From the IMG/VR virus record IMGVR_UViG_3300020178_000002, positions 186,001-250,000 of that record: 64,000 nt of DNA; one strand, given 5' to 3'. The notes under the pieces were generated by a model, which made no database searches, was not told where the DNA came from, and saw only the letters and a program-made list of their open reading frames with translations. Both the position numbers and the translations under genes were made by a program. Shown in pieces: positions 3,088 through 49,956 of the stretch (positions are counted from its first letter, which is position 1; each line of letters starts with the position of its first letter).

Positions 3088-4737
3088 TTATAGTCTTAAG
3101 AACCTTTTCCATCCACCCATTGCTTTTTCAGAACCGACAACAAGAAGGGAGATCAGCCAAGCAACCAGCATCGCTTGATACTGACCTGCTGTGAGGTAAT
3201 CTTTAAAAGTAAATAAAGCAAACAGAGAACCTAGTGTGCTGTGGTCAAAGAACATGAAAACTGTTTTAACCAAAAGCTTTGCTTTACTCGCACTTAGTTT
3301 TAATAGGCGAACCATTGTTTTTACAAATGTAGCTTCTGCTTTTTCATAATCTAAAGGGGTCTCTCCTATAATCCTTTGTAATCTCCCCCCATGAAAGAAC
3401 ATCCATTCATCAATAGTAAAGATCAAATCCTTGTAGTAGTTCTCTGGGCTTGTTTTAACTTCTTCCGCTTTAGCTTTCTTCTTTGCCCATGTCATCAAAC
3501 TATTCAAAGTATATTTTCTGCCGTTCTCATTTCGAATTGTAATATTTGATTTTAGTTTTTTACAGGCAGTGAATCTCACAAGCGTTAAGTTGTACCTTTC
3601 CAGATCTTTAGCTAGAGCTTCTTCTGCTTTGTCGAAAGCAATATCTTTCCAATAGTCAAGTTTAGTTTCTAATCCCTTTCTCATCTTTTCTTTATCTGCA
3701 GCAGGGATTTCTTTTTTCTCAAGCTTCTTAAGAAGTTCCATAAGGTAATCAGATTTATTAAAGAGAGCAGAGATTGTAGCATTGTTCAATAAAGATGCTT
3801 CTCTTACATTTGAAGGTATTGGCATTGGGTTGAACTTTGAAGCTAATTCAACCATCTCCCTATCTTCATGGACTAACCTTTGCCTATACCAATCACCACC
3901 CATAGTAATGAGAGCATAATTGGTTCTATCAAGATTTCTTTCTAACTTAGCTAAGTTCTTTGGCAGGGCTTGTAAGTTATCACCGATGTGCTTATAGACT
4001 TCTTCCCTCAAAGGAGATTTCTCTAGTGAGCTAAGAAGCTGGTTGACAGTTAATCTGATAATGTGTGCTTCAACCCTAGCTTGAGAGACACCACTTGATA
4101 AGATTGACCAGCTAGCTTGGCTTGAACCAACTCTCTTAAGTCTTTGTAAATCACTTTGGGCAGACTCCCAGAAAAGGTTCGGAGCTTCCATTGTCTTGAA
4201 AAAAAGAAAAAAGAATCCAGACCCGAAGATCTTTAAGCCAATCTTTAATAGGAGAGCACCTACTTTCCCATACCTCTTAAGCTTGTTTTTCACATATCGA
4301 ATCTCTGACCCTTTCTGTGGGTATTTAGGTTCTTCACCTAAGAGAGACTGCAAAAAGCTACCATGCTTAATCATCCATGCGTCAAAAATATCATAGAGAT
4401 CCTCAGCCCACTCTTTTGCATCTTCATCATTTCCAGGTGCAGAGAAGTTAGTTTCATGTCTATATAAGAATGTTTGTATTGAAAATACTTCACCAGTTAA
4501 GAAGGGAAAGTCACTCTGATCCGCATAGGGTACAAAGAAAGGCTTTTTTAGCCTTAGCTTTATATTCCAGAGCAAGCTCTTTTTCAGATCAAAACTAACT
4601 AAATCTATACCTAAGGGCTTTAACGCTTTCTTCAAATCTTCCTTAGCAATTTGGATTTCAGAAGCTTTCAACTTCTTCATTTCTTCTAGTATCTTCTTTG
4701 CTTTCTCGATTTCAGTGTTCATAATAACTCCTACCAC
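3088..4737 (-). CDS. hypothetical protein with C-terminal hydrophobic helices (549 aa), probable virion protein
   Basis: Long ORF with hydrophobic segments near the C-terminus and an internal REAS motif. Confidence 0.7.
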   Translation of the reverse strand: MVGVIMNTEIEKAKKILEEMKKLKASEIQIAKEDLKKALKPLGIDLVSFDLKKSLLWNIKLRLKKPFFVPYADQSDFPFLTGEVFSIQTFLYRHETNFSAPGNDEDAKEWAEDLYDIFDAWMIKHGSFLQSLLGEEPKYPQKGSEIRYVKNKLKRYGKVGALLLKIGLKIFGSGFFFLFFKTMEAPNLFWESAQSDLQRLKRVGSSQASWSILSSGVSQARVEAHIIRLTVNQLLSSLEKSPLREEVYKHIGDNLQALPKNLAKLERNLDRTNYALITMGGDWYRQRLVHEDREMVELASKFNPMPIPSNVREASLLNNATISALFNKSDYLMELLKKLEKKEIPAADKEKMRKGLETKLDYWKDIAFDKAEEALAKDLERYNLTLVRFTACKKLKSNITIRNENGRKYTLNSLMTWAKKKAKAEEVKTSPENYYKDLIFTIDEWMFFHGGRLQRIIGETPLDYEKAEATFVKTMVRLLKLSASKAKLLVKTVFMFFDHSTLGSLFALFTFKDYLTAGQYQAMLVAWLISLLVVGSEKAMGGWKRFLRL

Positions 4738-5465
4738 TTAATCTTGAACTTGATTTTTATTTGAGTGTCTTCACTGACGACACTTTCGGGAGGTCGAGTA
4801 TCGAAGTTATAGTTCAGCTCATTTACTACTGAAAATACCTTATTGATCTTGAACTCAATAGACCCTGTAGTCAGTATTCTGTAGTCTGAAAAGTTGTTAA
4901 ACAAAGGCTGATAATAGGTGATAATCTGACCTTTGATGTGATCATCCCAACTTTTTCCAATCTTCAAATAAGAAGTCCCTCTCGGGTTTAAAGATTTTTT
5001 ATTTGAACCTTTAATCTTCTCATAATCAGACATTCCCCCTATGCCCACAGCTATTAATTCTTTCAAGAAAGTAAATCTTAAACCACAACCTGTGAGCTGT
5101 CTCAAAGTAAGGAGTTTAAAATCATCTTTCTGGAATTGAGTGAATACCTCTGTTCCTAAATTACTCCACCACATTGCTGTCCATCTTAAGTGAGAATAAG
5201 ACTCGTTTTGAAAGGTACTCTCTTGGTTTTCACCATGAGAAGTAGAGCCTATAATCAAACCATGATGGATATCTCCTACAAAGTCTAACCTAAGACCTGC
5301 TTGGTATTGAAAGACACTTACGTTCCCTCTTTGAAGGAAGAGACTAGATTCCACAGACCCATGAGATCCTTTAGGTTTAGAACCTCGATCACTTTCAATA
5401 TTAACGACCTGCCCATAAGAATATAAAGGCAGAGAAAGTAAGATAGACAGCAACAAGTTTCTCAT
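4731..5465 (-). CDS. outer-membrane beta-barrel protein, DUF481/YdiY-like
   Basis: Signal peptide MRNLLLSILLSLPLYSYG-Q, alternating beta-strand pattern, C-terminal beta-signal ending IKIKFKIKW. Confidence 0.7.
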   Translation of the reverse strand: MRNLLLSILLSLPLYSYGQVVNIESDRGSKPKGSHGSVESSLFLQRGNVSVFQYQAGLRLDFVGDIHHGLIIGSTSHGENQESTFQNESYSHLRWTAMWWSNLGTEVFTQFQKDDFKLLTLRQLTGCGLRFTFLKELIAVGIGGMSDYEKIKGSNKKSLNPRGTSYLKIGKSWDDHIKGQIITYYQPLFNNFSDYRILTTGSIEFKINKVFSVVNELNYNFDTRPPESVVSEDTQIKIKFKIKW

Positions 5466-5953
5466 AGCAAATCTACTTCAACTACAGGAGGGTGGTTTTC
5501 TAAAAGTAGCTTTGCAAAAGGACATCTTTTTCTTTTAGCATAGGCTTTCAAAAAAGGAAGATGTTCTCTATCTCTTGTGTGTAAAGAGTGTGCAATCTCT
5601 CCAGCATATAAAATGAGGTCTGAAATTGACTTGTGACAAGCTTTTACACAAGAAGGTTTATATCCCATAGGTCCTTTCAAAACCCTAACAGGGGCTTTAT
5701 TTATGAGACATTGACCAGAGAGTGCTTTTGCAGCAGGACATCTACTAACATTCCCTCTCATGGCAAGATAAGAACCAGATTCTTGGTGCTTATTCTCTAG
5801 AGACCTAGACATAGACTCAGTTTTCTTCTGCAACTTGCGTATTGCAGATTCGACATCTCTTTGCACAGCTTTACTAAAACCAAACATTCCAGAGGCTGCT
5901 TGCTTTTCCATGTGTAGAGAGGCAACTCTTTGAATACGATTCATTATAGCCAC
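5462..5953 (-). CDS. hypothetical protein with RVASL...EKQAA leader
   Basis: 163 aa ORF coupled to both neighbours; Cys-containing internal repeat (RCPAAKAL / RCPFAKLL). Confidence 0.7.
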   Translation of the reverse strand: MAIMNRIQRVASLHMEKQAASGMFGFSKAVQRDVESAIRKLQKKTESMSRSLENKHQESGSYLAMRGNVSRCPAAKALSGQCLINKAPVRVLKGPMGYKPSCVKACHKSISDLILYAGEIAHSLHTRDREHLPFLKAYAKRKRCPFAKLLLENHPPVVEVDLL

Positions 5954-29667: not shown

Positions 29668-29789
29668 GATATTTCATCTCTTTCTTTGATTAAGTGTTTA
29701 CCTTATTATCAATAACGTGCGAGGGGGCATGTAATTTTTTAGCTGGGCTAAAGTATTATTTTATAAAGAAACTAAAAAAGGATTTGAAC

Positions 29790-39769: not shown

Positions 39770-39807
39770 GACTATTTTAGGTGGAGTATAAATAGACTAC
39801 AAAGACC

Positions 39808-43208: not shown

Positions 43209-43224
43209 TATAAATAGACTATAA
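43209..43224 (-). promoter_or_regulatory. putative late promoter motif (TTATAGTCTATTTATA)
   Basis: Match upstream of the 42613..43167 gene. Confidence 0.6.
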
Positions 43225-43252
43225 ACGTAATATATTTTAAACAGGAGGCTGC

Positions 43253-43825
43253 ATGAGAGTTATTGTAGAGGGGTTGATTGGAGTAGGCAAAAGCACATTC
43301 ACAACGGAGTTTGCAAGAATACATAAGCTAAACCCAATGTATGAGTCTGTTGATGATAATCCTTTTCTCTCAAAGTTCTATTCAGACCCAGAGAGATGGG
43401 CTTACACTCTTCAAATGCATTTCCTCTACGACAGATACTCAAAGCACCTTCCAGAGAACATCATCTTAGACAGGTCTATCTGGGGTGACCTTTGCTTTGC
43501 AAACATACTAAGAGAAGATGGTACTCTGACAGAAGAAGAGTATGAGTCTTATTTGAGCCATTCAAAAGTTTTAACAAACCATGTCCCTAAAGTAGACTTG
43601 TGTATACACCTTGATGTACCTGTCTATAAAGCAATGGACAGGATTAGTAAAAGGGGGAGAGGTTTTGAGACTTCTATTTCAGAAGATTACTTGGTTAGGC
43701 TCAAGAAAGAAATAGACTCACTCCCCTCTTTCTTACCCTCTGACATTAAGTATGTTAAAATTGATTGGGAAGACATGAGCCTAGATGAAATATCTAGATA
43801 TATTTCAAATATAGATTTAAAATAA
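43253..43825 (+). CDS. deoxynucleoside kinase
   Basis: IVEGLIGVGKST P-loop, E.V..NPFL..FY.DP.RWA...Q, DRS, RI..RGR. Confidence 0.9.
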   Translation: MRVIVEGLIGVGKSTFTTEFARIHKLNPMYESVDDNPFLSKFYSDPERWAYTLQMHFLYDRYSKHLPENIILDRSIWGDLCFANILREDGTLTEEEYESYLSHSKVLTNHVPKVDLCIHLDVPVYKAMDRISKRGRGFETSISEDYLVRLKKEIDSLPSFLPSDIKYVKIDWEDMSLDEISRYISNIDLK

Positions 43826-45355
43826 GGATACTTGACCTTTCTCATCTAGCTTTAGTCTTTCTTCTTTATATATTTCGCAGCTATTTTCGTTTACTTGTTC
43901 CCTTAAGTTTGAAGGTGCTGATCTGCCTTTCCTCGTTGTATTCGCTTGTCTTCTTAGTGCTTCATCAGACCTTAAAGGTAAGGAATCCATAGTGTTAGGG
44001 GTTGCCCATATAGATTCCTCTATATCTACACCCCTCTCCTCAGCTTCAACTTGAACCTGTAGAGTAGGTGCGAAGGTCTCTTTGCCCTGCTCTAAGCGAC
44101 TCTTCATTCTTGAGATATAATGACGTAGGTTCTCACCCCTCTGTGAAGCTGGAGGAGTTGACCAATTCTCTCCATAAATCAACGAAGGCTCTTCTTGCAG
44201 TATCTGGAACAACTCCATTTCCAAGCATTCTGAGCTCATCCGTTCTATTATCAAAGGACTCGTACAGCTTGGTTGCACCCACCCTATTGGAAGCCCCATC
44301 AAGGTCTCTACCCACCTCGGGTTCAACTTCATTGCAGCGTCCTTGCCCATGCTCACACGATCTGCGAAGTTCAGAGAGTGTGACTCCCCCACCCCTTTCG
44401 CTTTCCTTCGACCCGTCATTGTCAGAGTTATCTCTTTGTGGTGTATTTCCTGCGTTGTTGGAGTTGGCCACCCATATAAAGGGATGCTCGCTTCCTTCTC
44501 TTGAGTCTCCTTCAGGAGATCCTGATATATCTCTATTGCGTGAGGGTTCACCTGCTCCCGTAGATTGCCTGGATGGGAGCGTCTTTTCCTCCCCCCTGCT
44601 CTTGCTAGTCTTCTCAATGCCTCGTCGCTCCTCTGGTCTAGATGATCGAGAGTATTGGGAGTCCCCCAGAGTGACTCTTGGAGGCTCCCATGAGTATTGG
44701 TCTCTTCCTCTTGAGGATGGGTATATAGAGCCACTTGTGTCTCGGTTTCGGTCAAGGAGTCCATTGACCCATTCCAAGCTTTCTCTTTCGGTACCTCTTT
44801 TAATACCAAGAATGAAGACTCGCTTCCTTCTATGTGGAGCACCGACTTCTCTCGCTGAGAATATACCTGCCGTTGCTTCGTAACCCACCCTCTCCAATTC
44901 TCTAAGAACATGGAGCAAAACCGATGTTCCTTTTGGATCTGACCAATCATCTGATTTGAGTTCTGCTGAGAGGATTCCTTCGACATTCTCAAGGAAAATA
45001 ACGGAAGGTTGAGATACTTTAACTCCTCTGATGATATGTGGGAAGAGGTGTCTTGGGTCTGAGTCTGCTTTTCTTTTTCCTGCTGAACTAAAGGGCTGAC
45101 AAGGGAAGCCTCCTGACAAGATATCCACTTTTCCACGAAAGATTTCCCAGTCGAGGGTTTTAAGATTCGACCAGATAGGTGCTGGCTCAATAAACCCTTT
45201 TTCCATCTTTGCAACCAAGTTGCAGATTGGGAAGCTTTCGATCTCCACATAAGTGATTGTTCTGACATCTCCGAGAGCTTTTTTAAGTCCGATGTCGATT
45301 CCCCCATAACCTGCACAGAGTGATAGGTGTTTAAGTTCTTTGGTACTATCCACAT
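43817..45355 (-). CDS. alternative-frame C5-methyltransferase beta subunit (motif IX plus TRD-like repeats)
   Basis: 512 aa open frame fully overlapping the MTase gene; contains LNPRWVETLMGLPIGW (motif IX-like) and four W-x-T-P modules; ATG 6 nt after AGGAG. Confidence 0.7.
   Translation of the reverse strand: MWIVPKNLNTYHSVQVMGESTSDLKKLSEMSEQSLMWRSKASQSATWLQRWKKGLLSQHLSGRILKPSTGKSFVEKWISCQEASLVSPLVQQEKEKQTQTQDTSSHISSEELKYLNLPLFSLRMSKESSQQNSNQMIGQIQKEHRFCSMFLENWRGWVTKQRQVYSQREKSVLHIEGSESSFLVLKEVPKEKAWNGSMDSLTETETQVALYTHPQEEETNTHGSLQESLWGTPNTLDHLDQRSDEALRRLARAGGRKRRSHPGNLREQVNPHAIEIYQDLLKETQEKEASIPLYGWPTPTTQEIHHKEITLTMTGRRKAKGVGESHSLNFADRVSMGKDAAMKLNPRWVETLMGLPIGWVQPSCTSPLIIERMSSECLEMELFQILQEEPSLIYGENWSTPPASQRGENLRHYISRMKSRLEQGKETFAPTLQVQVEAEERGVDIEESIWATPNTMDSLPLRSDEALRRQANTTRKGRSAPSNLREQVNENSCEIYKEERLKLDEKGQVSLF
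44133..45353 (-). CDS. DNA cytosine-5 methyltransferase, alpha subunit
   Basis: CAGYGG (I), GGFPCQPFS (IV), LENV (VI), PHRRKRVF (VIII), LGNGVVP (X); GTG start 8 nt after AGGAG. Confidence 0.9.
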   Translation of the reverse strand: MDSTKELKHLSLCAGYGGIDIGLKKALGDVRTITYVEIESFPICNLVAKMEKGFIEPAPIWSNLKTLDWEIFRGKVDILSGGFPCQPFSSAGKRKADSDPRHLFPHIIRGVKVSQPSVIFLENVEGILSAELKSDDWSDPKGTSVLLHVLRELERVGYEATAGIFSAREVGAPHRRKRVFILGIKRGTERESLEWVNGLLDRNRDTSGSIYPSSRGRDQYSWEPPRVTLGDSQYSRSSRPEERRGIEKTSKSRGEEKTLPSRQSTGAGEPSRNRDISGSPEGDSREGSEHPFIWVANSNNAGNTPQRDNSDNDGSKESERGGGVTLSELRRSCEHGQGRCNEVEPEVGRDLDGASNRVGATKLYESFDNRTDELRMLGNGVVPDTARRAFVDLWRELVNSSSFTEG

Positions 45356-45907: not shown

Positions 45908-46282
45908 CTAGCCATTCCATTCAAAATTAAAGAATGGGCTATGGAACATCCCTTTAACTTTCCATTCCAGAAGCCAGCTTTCGTCAAGCCTATCTGAATA
46001 TATTTTTATAGGCTCTTTGTTTTTAATAGCTCTAGCAAACTCATTTTTCTTGACATAGAGCTTCTCATTCTTAGTGACCCTAGTAGGTACACCCGTGCCT
46101 CCTAATGGTCTTAGAAGCAAGTTTGTTGTATTTGGGAAATAAACCCCATCCCCCATATTTTTTCTAAGGAATGTTCTAATGTGCTTGTACCTGAAGTACG
46201 CTTTGTTTTTATTCCCACCAAAGAAAAAAGCTTGCTTCTCTAATCTGGCAATACGACTTTCAAGGTTTGCGATGCTGTCCAT
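45908..46282 (-). CDS. hypothetical protein with LESRIARLEKQA leader
   Basis: GAGGAG RBS before ATG 46282. Confidence 0.7.
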   Translation of the reverse strand: MDSIANLESRIARLEKQAFFFGGNKNKAYFRYKHIRTFLRKNMGDGVYFPNTTNLLLRPLGGTGVPTRVTKNEKLYVKKNEFARAIKNKEPIKIYSDRLDESWLLEWKVKGMFHSPFFNFEWNG

Positions 46283-46330
46283 GATCTCTCCTCTTCTTTT
46301 ATTCAATAAGGAGATGCCATAAAGAGGTTA

Positions 46331-47047
46331 TTAACTAGAAGCCCAGCCAAAGAAAACAAAGCCTTTGGTCTTGTTGCTTAACTTACTTTGAACCAATTTA
46401 CCTCTTACAGTGTAGGTAGCAAGTTTAGAGGAATCTTGATAAGACATACCTCCTTGGTCTTGAACCTTTAAAATACGAATAACTTCGTCTGGGTCTATTC
46501 TGTTTGTAACTTGCATAAGCTCTTTCAAACGAGCAACAGCTTCTTTCTTTGTAGAAAACTTCTCAGAGGTGTTACTAGACCTCACAAAGTAAACATCACC
46601 TGTTGGTTTATGTGTTACAATCTTCCTTTTCCCTGCTGGTGTTGTCAGAACAACACCATCCCTCCAAGAAATCTCAACCTCAAGGATAGCTCCTGCTCTT
46701 TTTCTTTTGAGTTTCATCTTCTCTTCGACAATCCTTCGTGCTTCATTCCCATCTTTAGCTTTAACTTTCACTTCAAAGTCCTTTTCAACAAGCACTTTTT
46801 TTTCAGCGAAAGCTACACAACTAGCGGGATCCCACTTTGTAATTTTAAAATTATTATCCTCAGCATACTGATGAGCTTGTTCTTCAGTCATAACTTGACT
46901 AGTAGCCATGACAAAACTGTCTTTTTCAGCAATAGTTCCAGTATAGCCTCTGCTTCCATACTCATACCTTGCATCCTCCACAAGGGAATTAAATACTTTT
47001 CGAGCATCTGACCCATAGCCAACTTCGATAAATGATTGTGCACCCAT
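46331..47047 (-). CDS. hypothetical phage protein (238 aa)
   Basis: AGGAG RBS; GYTGTIAEK...KW...FFGWASS pattern. Confidence 0.75.
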   Translation of the reverse strand: MGAQSFIEVGYGSDARKVFNSLVEDARYEYGSRGYTGTIAEKDSFVMATSQVMTEEQAHQYAEDNNFKITKWDPASCVAFAEKKVLVEKDFEVKVKAKDGNEARRIVEEKMKLKRKRAGAILEVEISWRDGVVLTTPAGKRKIVTHKPTGDVYFVRSSNTSEKFSTKKEAVARLKELMQVTNRIDPDEVIRILKVQDQGGMSYQDSSKLATYTVRGKLVQSKLSNKTKGFVFFGWASS

Positions 47048-47089
47048 AATAGTTTCTCCTATTCTATTGTTTCTTATATACTATTTTTA

Positions 47090-47105
47090 TATAAATAGAC
47101 TACAA
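47090..47105 (-). promoter_or_regulatory. putative late promoter motif (TTGTAGTCTATTTATA)
   Basis: Match upstream of the 46331..47047 gene; the 18-mer is identical to that at 39787. Confidence 0.55.
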
Positions 47106-47117
47106 AGTAGGAAAAAT

Positions 47118-47260
47118 AAATGCCCACTATGCCGAGATATTTGACCAATCCCAAGGTTGCACTGAGTCATGCAATCAAAGAACTGAGCGATTAATGGGGA
47201 ATCTTCTGTAAGAACTTACATTTAAGATTGAATAAACAATCTACCACTTACGAATACCGA
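47118..47260 (-). pseudogene. degenerate duplicate of the nrdB 3' end
   Basis: Encodes ...WDWSNISA* versus nrdB ...WDWDKITA*; shares AAATGCCCACTATGC (15 nt), CCAATCCCA in register, and ACCACTTACGA. Confidence 0.65.
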
Positions 47261-47329
47261 AACACTTGACACTAACTTGTTGAGTACTTAGATTTGAAAT
47301 ATGTAAAACTTTCCTCAAAGGAATCAGAC

Positions 47330-47575
47330 ATGAAGAAAACTATTCTTATCGCAACTCTTTTTATGTTCATCTCGTCAGTTGCTGTCGCCCAAAGCCCTAT
47401 GGCTCGTTGGAACGGACTCGCAGGAAGTGGTCATCAGGGTGGAAGCTCAAAGAGCAGTGGAAGCTCAAAGAGCAGTGGTGGCTCAAAGAGCAGTGGAAGC
47501 TCTAAGAGTGGTGGCTCAAAGGGTGGTGGAAGCTCTAAGAGTGGTGGCTCAAAGGGTGGGAAGAAAGGGAAATAA
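47330..47575 (+). CDS. small secreted Gly/Ser/Lys-repeat protein
   Basis: AAGGA RBS; signal peptide MKKTILIATLFMFISSVAVA-Q; SSKSSG/GSKGGG repeats. Confidence 0.6.
   Translation: MKKTILIATLFMFISSVAVAQSPMARWNGLAGSGHQGGSSKSSGSSKSSGGSKSSGSSKSGGSKGGGSSKSGGSKGGKKGK
47438..47570 (+). repeat. coding minisatellite (GGAAGCTC[A/T]AAGAG / GGTGGCTCAAAG units)
   Basis: About seven imperfect 15-18 nt tandem units. Confidence 0.85.
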
Positions 47576-47583
47576 GAATTTTC

Positions 47584-48663
47584 TTATAGGGACTTGGTAC
47601 TCACAGCTTCATAACCTCGCTTGCTGCCAAGCTCCCAATCTCCCCTCTTCAGCAACAAACTCTTAGCCTTACCCTTGCCTAAGATGCAAGTCTGCTTGAG
47701 AGTGTGGTTTCTCACCTGTAAGTTCGCACTCTTAAAGGTATAGCCCTCCTCTAACTTGTCCAAGTAAACCTCACGAGGCACAAGCTCTACCTCACCCTCT
47801 AAGTTAATCAACTTCACAGGCTTCAAAGACCAATTCCCCATCTGACCCTTAGACTTGGCCTCCCGAACACCCTCTAACTTAGAGATCACATCATAGTTGA
47901 CCCTCTCTAAGTCATAGTGAGTTCCAAACTTGAACCCATGCTCCAAAACAAGATGCTTCACCACATCATGCTGACCACAACTATATATCCCAATGTCCAT
48001 ATGGTGAATGTTCACAACACCCTTAGAGCAAAGCGACCAACCCAGCCTAAAGTACTCCGCTAACTGCTCTCTTGGTATCTCGATCTCAACTCCGTCTTTC
48101 TCTACCTTGATCGGTTTCATATTTCCGTCCCTACATTTACCTTTCCACTCGATATTGTCATACATAACATCTCTTTGCTTCTTCTTAAACGAGGGGTCCT
48201 TTATAGTCTTAGTATAAGACTCATGCCACCTCTGTCGTGCTTCTCCCTCTCTTGAAGCAAGAACCTTCTCACGATAGCCCTCATCCTCCCATAAGGATTT
48301 CGTCCTCTCACTCATCTCCATCCTAACGATAGAGTCCGAGCAATAATGCTTCAAAGCGTTAGATGAAGAACCCATACCCCCACTGTTCATGTTCAAACAA
48401 AGTGGGTCGTGGTCATCACCACCGATATACTTCTCGCCCACAATATCTGCCTCATAAGCGTAAGCTTCACTCTCCTCATCAAACTCCTTTAAGATTTCTT
48501 TCTCAAACTCATTAGGGTGAGCTTTCATCTTACGCAAAAGCAAGATGCCAGAGCCTTGATACTTACTTCCATCTGGATCTCGATCAGAGTAAGTACCCTT
48601 GCCGATGTAATACTCGCCTGTCCTCTTGTTAAACTGACGATAAACATAATAACCTTTAGCCAT
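47584..48663 (-). mobile_element. free-standing GIY-YIG homing endonuclease
   Basis: YYVY...YYIG...Y.GSG N-terminal nuclease motif; immediately downstream of nrdB. Confidence 0.85.
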
Positions 48664-48737
48664 CTCAAATGCCCTTTCAAAGTATTTATTGAAAAGTGTA
48701 CTTGAGTGCTAAGATTTAGTCAATCCTAAAATGCCCA

Positions 48738-49712
48738 CTATGCTGTGATTTTATCCCAATCCCACTCGCCCGAAAGACCATTATTTGAATAATCTGAGAC
48801 AACCCCCTCAAAGAAGTTCTTAAAGCTATCACCACTTACGACCCAATCGAGCCATTTTAGGGGATTATTTTTCTGACCGAAGACAGGTTTGAGTCCGAGT
48901 TGTAGGAGTCTTCTATCTGCAAGGTATCGAACATAAGTCTTAACCTCTTGAGAGGTGAGACCTTGAAGTTCTACACCTTGGAAAACAAGATCTACAAGAG
49001 CATCCTCAAGCTCAACGGCTTTTTCATAGTTTGTGTAGATGTAGCTCTTGAGCTTATCTGTCACAACTCTGGGGTGTTCCTTGCAGTATTCCTGAAAGAG
49101 CTTAGTCATACCTTCTACATGAGTGCTTTCATCTCTAATGCTCCATTCAACAATCTCACACATGCCTTTCATCTTCCCAAAGCGTTGGAAGTTGAGCAGC
49201 ATAACAAAAGCAGAGAAGAGACTCATGCCCTCATTGCAGACAGAACGTGCAAGTTCAAATGCAAGGTGAGTGGCCTTCCCCAGACCCTCAGGAGCTTCTG
49301 TCATGAATTCAATCTTCTCACGCATCTCATCAAACTTGAGAAATGCGGAGTATTCTTTTTCTGCAAGACCCAGAGTATCATTAAGTAAAGCATATGCTCT
49401 CTGGTGAGTACCCTCTCTATTTGCGAAAGAGAGAAGCATATTCCTAATCTCATTGTTCTTAAACTCTTTAATAAAAACATCACAGTAGTTGCCACCGACT
49501 GCAACATCACTCTGGGTGAAGATTCTTAGGATTTGAGTAATGAAATCTCTTTCTTGGTCTGTAAGACCTTGACCTTTCCATTGGTTTACATCATCTTGAA
49601 GCTTTGCTTCCCAAGTACCCCAATGGATTTTTTCATGTTCTTCACTGATCTGCATAGCCCAAGGGTATTGGAATGGTTTAAATGCTTTACTGAAACTTGT
49701 TAATCCTGACAT
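48738..49712 (-). CDS. nrdB: ribonucleotide reductase class Ia beta subunit
   Basis: FTQSDV.V, REGTH..AY, EG..LFS.F, RDES.H di-iron motifs; the likely start is ATG 49712. Confidence 0.95.
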   Translation of the reverse strand: MSGLTSFSKAFKPFQYPWAMQISEEHEKIHWGTWEAKLQDDVNQWKGQGLTDQERDFITQILRIFTQSDVAVGGNYCDVFIKEFKNNEIRNMLLSFANREGTHQRAYALLNDTLGLAEKEYSAFLKFDEMREKIEFMTEAPEGLGKATHLAFELARSVCNEGMSLFSAFVMLLNFQRFGKMKGMCEIVEWSIRDESTHVEGMTKLFQEYCKEHPRVVTDKLKSYIYTNYEKAVELEDALVDLVFQGVELQGLTSQEVKTYVRYLADRRLLQLGLKPVFGQKNNPLKWLDWVVSGDSFKNFFEGVVSDYSNNGLSGEWDWDKITA

Positions 49713-49956
49713 ATATCTTTTCCTTTTGATGAACACAGCTCAAAACAAAGCTGCTTAATACTGCCTTTAAAGGCATCTTACCTGTGTGCTAATAACTCTA
49801 AATCTTTGAAACAATATTCTTGCACTTTAGAGTTGGTAACAATACTAGCAAAATCAATATAAGGTCTAGCAGAAGCTAGATCATTATCCTTACATTATTC
49901 CTCAATGAAATTAAATCCCTAAAGCCAGATTTAAATTTTGAGTTTTTTTTAGACAT

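What the first reader, a model, noticed from the sequence alone, without database searches (positions are those of the whole stretch)
47118..48743. GIY-YIG element flanked by a duplicated nrdB 3' end
The functional nrdB end (WDWDKITA*) and a decayed copy 1.6 kb downstream (WDWSNISA*) share 15 nt across the stop codon plus further patches. A 16-nt near-repeat (TTGAGT[A/G]CT[T/A]AGATTT at 47280 and 48702) brackets the endonuclease and the small secreted gene. This fits a homing element that cut within nrdB and supplied a new, cleavage-resistant 3' end, displacing the old one, as described for some organellar HEGs; its use here is inference.
Basis: partly seen in the sequence, partly recalled or inferred. 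Interest (0 to 1): 0.65.

Follow-up and report, generated by a model that had tools for sequence, protein, structure and literature searches.

The report
Homing endonuclease cassette displacing nrdB's end
A selfish endonuclease gene in a 312-kb uncultured phage sits inside the last stretch of the ribonucleotide reductase small-subunit gene, brings its own copy of that gene's end so the enzyme stays whole, and leaves the displaced end as a 36-base relic; this layout is known from fungal mitochondria, and I found no phage example in the open literature I could search.

Summary
The last nine nrdB codons (eight residues and the stop) plus 9 nt downstream (48729-48764) recur 1611 nt away (47118-47153), 30/36 identical and unique in the genome. 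A 359-aa GIY-YIG-type endonuclease ORF lies between the copies.

- Never-invaded relatives have the nrdB stop abutting a phage promoter-like motif and the p238 gene. That is exactly the context of the window's relic.
- This endonuclease family always sits 75-100 nt after nrdB, whatever genes follow it.
- 5 of 8 distinct endonuclease-bearing loci carry a second nrdB end after the endonuclease gene, against 1 of 90 loci without it.
- The two longest relics (55 and 49 nt) start within 3 nt of the same Tyr-Ser codon.
- Other relatives show footprints where the endonuclease gene was deleted.

The most likely origin is double-strand-break repair at the nrdB 3' end, at least once one-sided. The insert also holds a separately mobile secreted-protein module and a 39-nt piece of a gene that this genome lacks.

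Not supported: the 16-nt "bracket". Untested, with mixed evidence: that the new end resists cleavage.

It is a new phage member of the "endonuclease ORF plus C-terminal duplication" kind known from fungal mitochondria.

The parts
48738..49736 (-). nrdB, the class I ribonucleotide reductase small subunit: intact, 332 aa, ends ...GEWDWDKITA*
   Evidence: Pfam PF00268 E=4e-68 over residues 19-292. phrog_86 E=1.4e-80. dN/dS against relatives is 0.03-0.09.
48729..48764 (-). Left repeat copy: the functional last nine nrdB codons (eight residues W D W D K I T A and the stop) plus 9 nt after the stop (TGGGCATTT)
   Evidence: The 26 nt TGGGATTGGGATAAAATCACAGCATA are identical in L081, whose nrdB is otherwise only 78% identical in nucleotides to the window's.
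48664..48737 (-). Spacer between the nrdB stop and the endonuclease start. It holds a sigma-70-like TTGACT-17-TACACT (48723->48695) and GAAAGGG ahead of the ATG
   Evidence: The spacer is conserved in all relatives that carry the endonuclease gene, and also in relatives where that gene was deleted (L093, L005, L100).
47584..48663 (-). Free-standing GIY-YIG-type homing endonuclease gene, 359 aa, intact, single copy in the genome
   Evidence: phrog_314 E=2.5e-17. Motifs Y6-V7-Y8, Y19-I20-G21, R28, E71 and N91 are conserved. The top fold matches are all GIY-YIG proteins, with the I-TevI catalytic domain at probability 0.90-0.97. dN/dS is 0.13-0.30. Single copy. Contigs from RNA libraries, 100% identical, cover 47497-48477.
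47207..47583 (+). Secreted-protein ('sec') module: an 81-aa ORF at 47330-47575 (signal peptide, then Ser/Gly/Lys repeats) and its promoter-like TTGACA-17-TAGATT at 47266-47294. It is convergent with the endonuclease gene
   Evidence: About 94% nucleotide identity to L171 4084-4454, although the neighbouring endonucleases are only 68% identical in protein. Promoter scan. No Pfam or PHROG family.
47168..47206 (-). 39-nt internal fragment of a 460-aa gene that follows the sec module in L171; this genome has no homologue of that gene
   Evidence: 92% identity to L171 5247-5285, which lies inside ORF 4476-5858. About 790 nt of L171 are missing at the junction ...TTACA|GAAGA.... No homologue in the complete 312-kb genome.
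47154..47167 (-). 14 nt of filler of unknown origin between the gene fragment and the relic
   Evidence: no match in any locus.
47118..47153 (-). Right repeat copy: the displaced, untranslated relic of an nrdB 3' end (W D W S N I S A * plus TGGGCATTT)
   Evidence: 30/36 identical to the window's own nrdB end. 34/36 identical to the functional ends of L005/L006 and 35/37 to that of L004. In this frame a TGA lies 16 codons upstream and there is no ATG. No difference inside the relic in run X11.
47090..47106 (-). Phage promoter-like motif TTTGTAGTCTATTTATA in front of p238
   Evidence: 8 matches in the window against 0.54 expected, and none of 100 shuffles reaches 8. The same motif follows the nrdB stop directly in never-invaded relatives L102, L105, L097 and L103.
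46331..47047 (-). p238, a 238-aa protein of unknown function: the ancestral downstream neighbour of nrdB
   Evidence: Its homologues (62-64% identity) start about 80 nt after the nrdB stop in L102 and L105. In L007/L095 the order is nrdB, endonuclease gene, relic, p238.

Best explanation
The 1575 nt between the two copies (47154-48728) are a free-standing GIY-YIG homing endonuclease cassette lodged in the 3' end of nrdB.

The cassette carries its own copy of the last nrdB codons and stop, followed by a short spacer with a promoter-like site and ribosome-binding site, and then the endonuclease ORF. NrdB therefore stays full length. The displaced nrdB end survives downstream as a 36-nt untranslated relic, joined to the ancestral promoter motif and p238.

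Likely mechanism: the enzyme cuts nrdB alleles that lack the cassette near the 3' end. The two longest relics in relatives begin within 3 nt of the same Tyr-Ser codon, 14 (L174) and 17 (L170) codons from the end of the gene counting the stop, which is the same place in the protein. The broken left end invades a donor's nrdB and copies its 3' end, the spacer and the endonuclease gene. On the right there is either only the short nrdB-end homology or none, so the join is made at the recipient's own nrdB end or illegitimately, and that end is kept as the relic.

In the window's lineage the copied tract also brought a secreted-protein module and part of a gene that this genome lacks.

Shown here: the anatomy, the association of relic and endonuclease gene across lineages, empty sites, deletion footprints, purifying selection on the endonuclease, and horizontal mosaicism.

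Inferred: cleavage in nrdB, the position of the cut, the repair pathway, and any resistance of the new end.
For: - Repeat: 36 nt, 30/36, score 42 against 18 +/- 2.2 in shuffles, unique in the genome.
- Empty sites: in L102, L105, L097 and L103 the nrdB stop is followed at once by TTTGTAGTTTcTTTATAG, and p238 begins about 80 nt later in L102 and L105. This is the same context as the relic.
- The endonuclease family lies 75-100 nt after nrdB in every contig fetched, although the genes that follow differ: p238, a UvrD-type helicase, Thy1, a RecD-like helicase, convergent ORFs.
- Second nrdB ends after the endonuclease gene: L170 55 nt, 50/55, score 85, with the endonuclease stop codon lying inside the old nrdB codons Ser-Ala-Asn; L176 score 56; L174/L175 score 52; the window 42; L095 39, where the endonuclease ORF ends ...DLDWSEIA* inside the relic.
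- Counts: 5 of 8 distinct endonuclease-bearing loci score 39 or more, against 1 of 90 loci without the gene. By hand, a hypergeometric test gives about 5e-6, but the lineages are not independent.
- Loss footprints: L093/L094 keep the spacer plus ATG GTG AGT GCG AAG TCC CTC TGA, that is, the endonuclease start fused to its last codons; L100 keeps the spacer only.
- The endonuclease gene is under purifying selection (dN/dS 0.13-0.30). It is less diverged at synonymous sites than the adjacent nrdB: window against L081, dS 0.46 against 2.0. Parts of it are 91-97% identical in nucleotides where nrdB is 70-84%.
- A 39-nt piece of a gene that the complete genome lacks lies between the sec module and the relic.
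- One-sided homing with illegitimate repair at microhomologies is documented for T4 introns (PMC2988022, citing Parker et al. 1999).
- The same three-part layout (inserted C-terminus, endonuclease ORF, native C-terminus) is documented in fungal mitochondria (PMC3630166, PMC6279837).
Against: - No cleavage data exist, so the target and the cut site are inferred only from where the relics begin.
- Three endonuclease-bearing lineages (L086/L004, L171, L172/L173) have no relic, so the relic is dispensable.
- L176 and L086 have a naive-type functional end beside the endonuclease gene, so immunity to self-cleavage is unexplained.
- The window's relic is 35/37 identical to alleles of a clade whose nrdB body is only 74-79% identical to the window's. 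It may therefore have arrived with the element rather than being this lineage's own old end.
- Relics in several lineages share the same endonuclease-tail junction (L170, L176, L081). This fits a single old event followed by decay as well as it fits repeated events.
- The Pfam GIY-YIG match is below threshold (E=1.9), and the fold-search E-values are weak (0.03-0.2).
Confidence: 0.72

Rival explanations
1. There was one ancient insertion, inherited vertically since. The cassette entered the nrdB 3' end once in an ancestor of these phages, the duplication arose then, and today's differences are only decay, deletion and gene conversion between the two copies. On this view the endonuclease is no longer homing.
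For: L170, L176 and L081 share the same junction between the endonuclease tail and the old nrdB codons (...AAGTCTCTCA(G/A)(C/G)TAA...), which suggests common descent of that junction. Endonuclease divergence roughly tracks nrdB divergence in protein identity.
Against: Synonymous divergence of the endonuclease gene is 3-4 times lower than that of the adjacent nrdB for several pairs. Parts of it are 91-97% identical in nucleotides between genomes whose nrdB is 70-84% identical. The gene is under purifying selection. It is always next to nrdB but in front of unrelated genes. The 26-nt DKITA patch is identical in two otherwise 78%-identical nrdB genes.
Confidence: 0.15
2. The duplication is unrelated to the endonuclease. 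A local duplication or slippage of the nrdB end happened by ordinary illegitimate recombination, and the endonuclease and secreted-protein genes merely landed in a permissive intergenic region.
For: One locus without the endonuclease gene (L028) has a second copy of the very end of nrdB, made by a tandem duplication of the downstream gene. So such duplications do occur without this gene.
Against: The second copy is strongly tied to the endonuclease gene: 5 of 8 loci with it against 1 of 90 without. The relic always lies after the endonuclease gene. In L170 and L095 the endonuclease ORF ends inside the relic.
Confidence: 0.05
3. The region is a splicing element. The 1.6 kb would be an intron (or would be bypassed), and the true NrdB C-terminus would be encoded by the downstream copy.
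For: nrdB genes of T-even phages do carry group I introns with endonuclease genes (PMC2988022, PMC3653736).
Against: No Rfam family matches on either strand of 46200-49900, even at E<=1. The nrdB ORF is complete without splicing and ends like its relatives. Relics are truncated to different lengths or absent in relatives. Contigs from RNA libraries show no joint between nrdB and the relic and do not cover the relic (weak evidence, since these are contigs and not reads).
Confidence: 0.02
4. The relic is kept because it does something. It could be part of the regulation of p238, or a short peptide that mimics the NrdB tail which binds the large subunit.
For: In L174/L175 the relic sits in a mini-ORF, MSMMDTPYSTNGMTGEWEW*, with an ATG. 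The relic has no differences in an independent population sample. From established knowledge of class I reductases, C-terminal peptides of the small subunit compete for the large subunit.
Against: In the window the relic has no ATG or ribosome-binding site in frame. Relics differ in length, are absent in three lineages, and no RNA-library contig covers the window's relic.
Confidence: 0.04

Closest known systems
Mobile endonuclease ORFs (mORFs) that form gene hybrids with a C-terminal duplication in fungal mitochondria: Allomyces macrogynus atp6; Glomus sp. atp6, atp9, cox2, nad3; Endoconidiophora atp6 and cob (PMC3630166, PMC6279837)
   Same: The three-part layout is the same: an inserted copy of the host gene's C-terminal coding end in phase with the gene, then an endonuclease ORF (GIY-YIG in atp9 and near atp6), then the displaced native C-terminal end. 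The displaced copy is closer to the alleles of relatives without the endonuclease than to the inserted copy.
   Different: This case is in a phage, not an organelle. The duplicated piece is short: 27 coding nt survive in the window and up to 51 in relatives. The endonuclease gene is a separate gene with its own promoter-like site and start, not fused in frame. The window's insert has picked up further cargo. Which copy is 'native' is ambiguous in the window.
Free-standing GIY-YIG Seg endonucleases of T4 and intronless homing (SegF, SegG and others; PMC2988022)
   Same: A free-standing GIY-YIG endonuclease gene sits between conserved genes, is present or absent among relatives, and has a presumed cut in the neighbouring conserved gene at a distance from its own insertion point. 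Flanking sequence is mosaic.
   Different: No duplication of the target gene's end is described in that review (the word 'duplicat' does not occur in its text). There is no detectable sequence relation beyond the catalytic motif; the only match among cultured phages is 30% identity over 137 aa. Cleavage is not shown here.
T4 mobE (HNH endonuclease between nrdA and nrdB, cuts nrdB; PMC2790892) and Aeromonas phage Aeh1 mobE, which splits nrdA into two genes (cited in PMC3653736)
   Same: Phage ribonucleotide reductase genes are targets and landing sites of free-standing endonuclease genes. In Aeh1 the insertion lies inside the coding region and the enzyme still works.
   Different: The nuclease family is different (HNH). 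mobE lies upstream of nrdB. In Aeh1 the gene is split, whereas here the gene stays whole because the cassette supplies the missing end.
[quoted passage not shown]
   Same: Homology on one side only, junctions at microhomology, and a route into new contexts. This fits the foreign gene fragment and the 'CA' microhomology junction in the window.
   Different: That was an experimental system with the td intron. Here the pathway is inferred from footprints only. I could not read the original paper.
I-TevI catalytic domain (PDB 1LN0, 1MK0)
   Same: The N-terminal ~90 residues of the model superpose on it (TM-score by target 0.50-0.52, probability 0.90-0.97). The GIY / YIG / Arg / Glu / Asn pattern is present.
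   Different: 21-24% identity. The linker and C-terminal part (residues 100-359) match no known DNA-binding domain. It is not encoded in an intron.

Membership tests
GIY-YIG nuclease superfamily | 'GIY' and 'YIG' motifs about 10-11 residues apart at the start of the domain | tested here: met
   Y6-V7-Y8 and Y19-I20-G21 (V7, Y8, Y19 and G21 invariant, Y6 nearly so, I20 replaced by Leu in two of the 12 family members).
GIY-YIG nuclease superfamily | Conserved Arg after YIG, a catalytic Glu and a metal-binding Asn (R27, E75 and N90 in I-TevI) | tested here: met
   R28 (Lys in one member), E71 invariant, N91 invariant. The correspondence to the I-TevI residues is by position and by the fold match, not by experiment.
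GIY-YIG nuclease superfamily | Significant match to the curated family profile (Pfam PF01541) | tested here: not met
   E=1.9, 9.3 bits against a cut-off of 22.6, although over the right residues (5-76 on profile positions 2-70). phrog_314 'homing endonuclease' does match, at E=2.5e-17.
GIY-YIG nuclease superfamily | GIY-YIG alpha/beta fold | tested here: inconclusive
   AlphaFold2 model with mean pLDDT 63.7; most of residues 1-70 score 73-85. The seven best Foldseek matches are all GIY-YIG proteins (PD-T4-3, the I-TevI catalytic domain); UvrC and UPF0213 follow lower down. But E-values are 0.03-0.26 and none is at or below 0.001.
Free-standing homing endonuclease gene (intronless homing) | Present or absent at the same locus among close relatives | tested here: met
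   Occupied: the window, L170, L081, L086/L004, L176, L095, L008/L104, L171, L172, L174. Empty: L102, L105, L097, L103. Deleted: L093/L094, L005/L006, L100.
Free-standing homing endonuclease gene (intronless homing) | Not inside an intron or intein; has its own expression signals | tested here: met
   No Rfam match. A separate ORF, 75 nt after the nrdB stop, with a conserved TTGACT-17-TACACT and GAAAGG before the ATG.
Free-standing homing endonuclease gene (intronless homing) | The enzyme cleaves the allele that lacks it, at or near the insertion site | not testable with these tools
   There is only indirect evidence: the relics start at the same nrdB codon in L170 and L174.
Free-standing homing endonuclease gene (intronless homing) | Horizontal spread with co-conversion of flanking sequence | tested here: inconclusive
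   dS of the endonuclease gene is lower than that of nrdB (0.46 against 2.0 for window-L081). Blocks of the gene are 91-97% identical in nucleotides. A 26-nt terminal nrdB patch is shared by the window and L081. No formal test of phylogenetic incongruence was run.
mORF-type gene hybrid with C-terminal duplication (fungal mitochondria) | An inserted copy of the host gene's 3' end in phase, so the host protein stays full length | tested here: met
   NrdB is 332 aa and its C-terminus aligns to the end with relatives.
mORF-type gene hybrid with C-terminal duplication (fungal mitochondria) | An endonuclease ORF lies between the inserted and the displaced 3' ends | tested here: met
   Order on the minus strand: 48764-48729 (left copy), 48663-47584 (endonuclease gene), 47153-47118 (relic).
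mORF-type gene hybrid with C-terminal duplication (fungal mitochondria) | The displaced copy resembles the alleles of relatives without the endonuclease more than it resembles the inserted copy | tested here: met
   Relic against L005/L006 34/36 and against L004 35/37; against the window's own functional end 30/36. Caveat: those relatives belong to a different nrdB clade.
mORF-type gene hybrid with C-terminal duplication (fungal mitochondria) | The hybrid end is expressed and the displaced end is not part of the mRNA | tested here: inconclusive
   Contigs from RNA libraries cover parts of nrdB and the endonuclease gene but nothing in 47003-47469. These are contigs, DNA carry-over is possible, and a gap proves nothing.

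The most novel reading that the evidence does not exclude
The duplicated nrdB end is not just debris. It may be the cassette's right-hand homology arm. With both arms inside nrdB (the gene body on the left, the last ~50 nt on the right), the element would be a self-contained unit that can home into any phage carrying a compatible nrdB, whatever genes follow, while never inactivating the essential gene. It would be a DNA-level equivalent of what introns and inteins achieve by splicing. This would explain why the family is always glued to nrdB in front of unrelated neighbours, and why relics match the local allele in L170, L176 and L095.
Probability: 0.3. Interest if true: 0.65.

Novelty: new member of a known kind. 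Interest (0 to 1): 0.5.

Why it matters
It shows, in uncultured aquatic jumbo phages, a way for a selfish endonuclease gene to occupy the coding end of an essential gene without an intron or intein: it brings a spare copy of that end. The related loci show empty sites, occupied sites and deletion footprints, in line with the proposed cycle of gain, decay and loss (Goddard and Burt, as cited in PMC6279837).

The relics give a concrete, testable prediction of where the enzyme cuts: around the Tyr-Ser codon 16-17 codons before the nrdB stop. The last residues of NrdB contact the large subunit (established knowledge of class I reductases), so swapping them between phages may also matter for enzyme compatibility.

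For annotation, short 'orphan' gene ends next to endonuclease genes are markers of past break repair, and of cargo such as the secreted-protein module being dragged between phages.

Tried and rejected
- Extending the repeat: gapped local alignments of 47060-47345 against the nrdB 3' regions of the window and of L004, L005, L007 and L081 give nothing beyond 36-38 nt. The 'further patches' are not homology.
- The 16-nt near-repeat as an element boundary: rejected.
- Intron: no Rfam match.
- Close cultured relatives: the DNA search of 50,697 phage records finds only distant nrdB matches. The protein search with the endonuclease finds one 30% match over 137 aa.
- PDB sequence search with the endonuclease: nothing meaningful.
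- A consistent 'immunising' difference between left copies and naive alleles: Leu codon CTT in most endonuclease-bearing genomes against TTA/TTG in most naive ones, a clustered CTTTCT/TTAGTT difference in L170, and the DKIT patch in the window and L081. But L172 and L176 (with the gene, TTA/TTG) and L091 (without it, CTT) break the pattern, so no claim is made.
- Assigning donor and recipient for the window: not resolvable (see the notebook, 'unexplained').
- Reading Parker et al. 1999 for duplications in one-sided homing products: the paper is not held.
- P0006 context: no DNA available.
- Literature search for a phage case of an endonuclease gene with a duplicated host-gene end: none found in five searches of the open-access library. 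This is not proof of absence.
Full report
WHAT IS THERE

The window is bases 186001-250000 of a complete 312,136-bp virus record with direct terminal repeats, so this is a jumbo phage. It is known from salt-marsh and marine metagenomes.

On the minus strand the region reads, in gene order:
- nrdB, 49736->48738, 332 aa, Pfam PF00268 E=4e-68.
- A 74-nt spacer.
- A 359-aa ORF, 48663->47584.
- A convergent 81-aa ORF with a signal peptide and Ser/Gly/Lys repeats, on the plus strand at 47330-47575.
- About 175 nt without an ORF.
- A 36-nt copy of the nrdB end, 47153->47118.
- The motif TTTGTAGTCTATTTATA, 47106->47090.
- A 238-aa gene, here called p238, 47047->46331.

THE REPEAT IS REAL

The ungapped match is 36 nt at 30/36 identity with 1611 nt spacing. 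Its local-alignment score is 42, against 18.0 +/- 2.2 (maximum 29) in shuffles, and there is no third copy in the genome.

The repeat covers the last nine nrdB codons (eight residues and the stop) plus 9 nt after the stop. It does not extend further.

THE ORF BETWEEN THE COPIES IS A GIY-YIG-TYPE ENDONUCLEASE

- It matches phrog_314 'homing endonuclease' at E=2.5e-17.
- Across its family the pattern YVY ... YIG ... R28 ... E71 ... N91 is conserved.
- In a fold search with an AlphaFold2 model, the seven best hits are all GIY-YIG proteins, including the I-TevI catalytic domain (probability 0.90-0.97), though with weak E-values.
- The Pfam GIY-YIG profile is not reached (E=1.9). I therefore call it GIY-YIG-type with that reservation.
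- It is single copy in the genome and under purifying selection (dN/dS 0.13-0.30).
- No intron model matches the region.

COMPARATIVE EVIDENCE

I fetched about 170 loci around nrdB relatives and around members of the endonuclease family. They fall into four states.

1. Never-invaded sites (L102, L105, L097, L103). The nrdB stop is followed directly by TTTGTAGTTTcTTTATAG-like sequence. In L102 and L105 the p238 homologue (62-64% identity) follows about 80 nt later. That motif occurs 8 times in the window against 0.54 expected, so it is probably a phage promoter. The window's relic + motif + p238 is therefore the ancestral right flank of nrdB.

2. Occupied sites with a second nrdB end after the endonuclease gene:
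   - L170, the closest relative (NrdB 96%, endonuclease 86%): 55 nt, 50/55, score 85. The endonuclease stop codon lies inside the old Ser-Ala-Asn codons of nrdB.
   - L176: score 56.
   - L174/L175, distant (endonuclease 59%): 49 nt, score 52.
   - The window: score 42.
   - L095 (= L007): score 39. The endonuclease ORF ends ...DLDWSEIA* inside the relic.
   - L081: the relic lies beside a fragment of the endonuclease tail, behind a tandem duplication.

3. Occupied sites without a relic: L086/L004, L171, L172/L173.

4. Deletion footprints. L093/L094 keep the spacer and an 8-codon ORF (seven residues and the stop) made of the endonuclease start fused to its last codons; L005/L006 are a more decayed version. 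L100 keeps only the spacer.

Counting distinct loci, 5 of 8 with the endonuclease gene have a second nrdB end scoring 39 or more, against 1 of 90 without it. That one case (L028) is a tandem duplication of the downstream gene.

THE ENDONUCLEASE GENE IS TIED TO nrdB AND SHOWS SIGNS OF HORIZONTAL MOVEMENT

In every contig fetched it sits 75-100 nt after the nrdB stop, while the genes that follow differ: p238, a UvrD-type helicase, Thy1, a RecD-like helicase, convergent ORFs.

Its synonymous divergence is well below that of the adjacent nrdB. For window against L081, dS is 0.46 against 2.0; for window against L176, 0.61 against 1.77. Blocks of it are 91-97% identical in nucleotides where nrdB is 70-84%, with two alternative linker types.

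L081 and L004 have 93% identical nrdB genes but differ at 6 of 13 nt in the terminal patch. There, L081 is identical over 26 nt to the window, whose nrdB is otherwise 78% identical. The last ~30 nt of nrdB are thus exchanged independently of the gene body.

WHERE THE BREAK PROBABLY IS

The two longest relics, in lineages whose endonucleases are only 59% identical, begin within 3 nt of the same Tyr-Ser codon, 14 (L174) and 17 (L170) codons from the end of nrdB counting the stop, which is the same place in the protein. The shorter relics (L176/L081, L095, the window) look like the same structure after internal deletions.

I infer a cut, or at least the end of resection, near that codon. This is inference, because no cleavage was tested.

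THE WINDOW'S INSERT HAS EXTRA CARGO

- Positions 47207-47583, holding the secreted-protein gene and its TTGACA-17-TAGATT promoter-like site, are about 94% identical to L171, although the neighbouring endonucleases are only 68% identical.
- The next 39 nt (47206->47168) are an internal piece of a 460-aa gene that follows this module in L171. About 790 nt are missing at a 'CA' microhomology junction.
- The complete genome has no homologue of that gene.

Foreign DNA from a donor with a different gene order therefore lies between the endonuclease gene and the relic. This is the signature expected of break repair that had homology on the nrdB side only. Such one-sided homing with illegitimate joins is described for T4 (PMC2988022).

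It is not an element boundary.

INDEPENDENT DATA

Contigs of a marine metagenome from another study (X11) carry the same arrangement, with no difference inside the relic itself. A minor variant skips the endonuclease linker region.

Contigs from two metatranscriptome libraries, 100% identical, cover parts of nrdB, the endonuclease gene and p238. They do not cover the relic or the spacer, and no joint links nrdB to the relic. These are contigs and DNA carry-over is possible, so this is weak evidence for expression and against splicing.

WHAT REMAINS OPEN

- Resistance of the new end to cleavage is untested. L176 and L086 keep a naive-type end beside the endonuclease gene.
- The window's relic (SNISA type) is 35/37 identical to alleles of a different nrdB clade. 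It may have travelled with the element rather than being this lineage's own old end.
- One old event followed by decay and conversion cannot be cleanly separated from repeated events.

COMPARISON WITH WHAT IS KNOWN

The layout is that of the mitochondrial 'mORF' gene hybrids: an inserted C-terminus, an endonuclease ORF, and the native C-terminus. Examples are Allomyces atp6 and Glomus atp6, atp9, cox2 and nad3 (PMC3630166), and Endoconidiophora atp6 and cob (PMC6279837).

Mechanistically it belongs with the free-standing Seg and Mob endonucleases of T4 and intronless homing (PMC2988022). It also fits the known liking of such genes for phage ribonucleotide reductase genes: mobE cuts nrdB (PMC2790892), and Aeh1 mobE splits nrdA (PMC3653736).

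I found no phage case of the duplicated-end layout in five searches of the open-access library. A review of phage reductase genes states that no duplicated RNR genes were identified in phage genomes (PMC3653736).

VERDICT

This is a real and well-supported feature: a new phage member of a known kind of selfish element. It is of moderate interest and comes with a clear experimental prediction.

Noticed in passing
window 47207-47583: The small secreted-protein module (81 aa: signal peptide, then Ser/Gly/Lys repeats, with its own sigma-70-like promoter) is about 94% identical in nucleotides to L171 4084-4454, while the adjacent endonucleases are only 68% identical in protein. It looks like a separately mobile 'moron' of unknown function.
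   Followed up: partly
window 47168-47206: A 39-nt internal fragment (92% identity) of a 460-aa gene that is found after the same module in L171 and after nrdB in L013. The complete 312-kb genome has no homologue, so this is a scrap of foreign DNA.
   Followed up: yes
window 47090-47106, 39787-39803, 43209-43225, 29762-29778 and four more: The motif TTTGTAGTyTATTTATA occurs 8 times in the window (0.54 expected), mostly on the minus strand. It is probably a phage-specific promoter and is conserved in front of p238 and its neighbours in relatives.
   Followed up: partly
L093 4966-5090 (also L094, L005, L006); L100 4990-5100: Footprints of endonuclease gene loss. In L093 the spacer is kept with an 8-codon ORF, ATG GTG AGT GCG AAG TCC CTC TGA, made of the gene's start fused to its last codons. 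In L100 the spacer is joined to the end of a convergent gene.
   Followed up: yes
window 48104-48376; alignment: The endonuclease gene is mosaic. The catalytic part and the last ~80 residues are nearly identical in nucleotides among diverged phages, while the linker exists in two unrelated types. A minor contig in run X11 skips exactly the linker region.
   Followed up: partly
L174 4191-4250 (same in L175): Here the nrdB relic sits in a mini-ORF with an ATG, MSMMDTPYSTNGMTGEWEW*, which would encode an NrdB-tail-like peptide. It may be chance.
   Followed up: no
L081 7140-7700: Behind the endonuclease gene there is a tandem duplication: two paralogous MRRSASE...RIARLE ORFs, each behind the promoter motif. 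The second unit carries a fragment of the endonuclease tail plus the nrdB relic.
   Followed up: partly
L028 5960-6760: A relative without the endonuclease gene has a tandem duplication of the gene after nrdB. The duplicated unit includes the intergenic region and the last ~10 nt of nrdB.
   Followed up: yes
window 43817-45355 (minus strand): A 512-aa ORF in another frame overlaps almost the whole C5 cytosine methyltransferase ORF (44133-45353, Pfam PF00145 E=6.6e-37). The 512-aa ORF has no Pfam match. That is unusually long for a chance open frame.
   Followed up: partly
L172 1-551: The nrdA gene upstream of this relative's nrdB carries a LAGLIDADG intein domain (precomputed Pfam PF14528). 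The reductase locus is a hot spot for several kinds of selfish elements.
   Followed up: no
window 47259 (run X11): An independent population variant has a 15-nt insertion, AAACACTTGACACTA, which duplicates the -35 region of the secreted-protein gene's promoter-like site.
   Followed up: no
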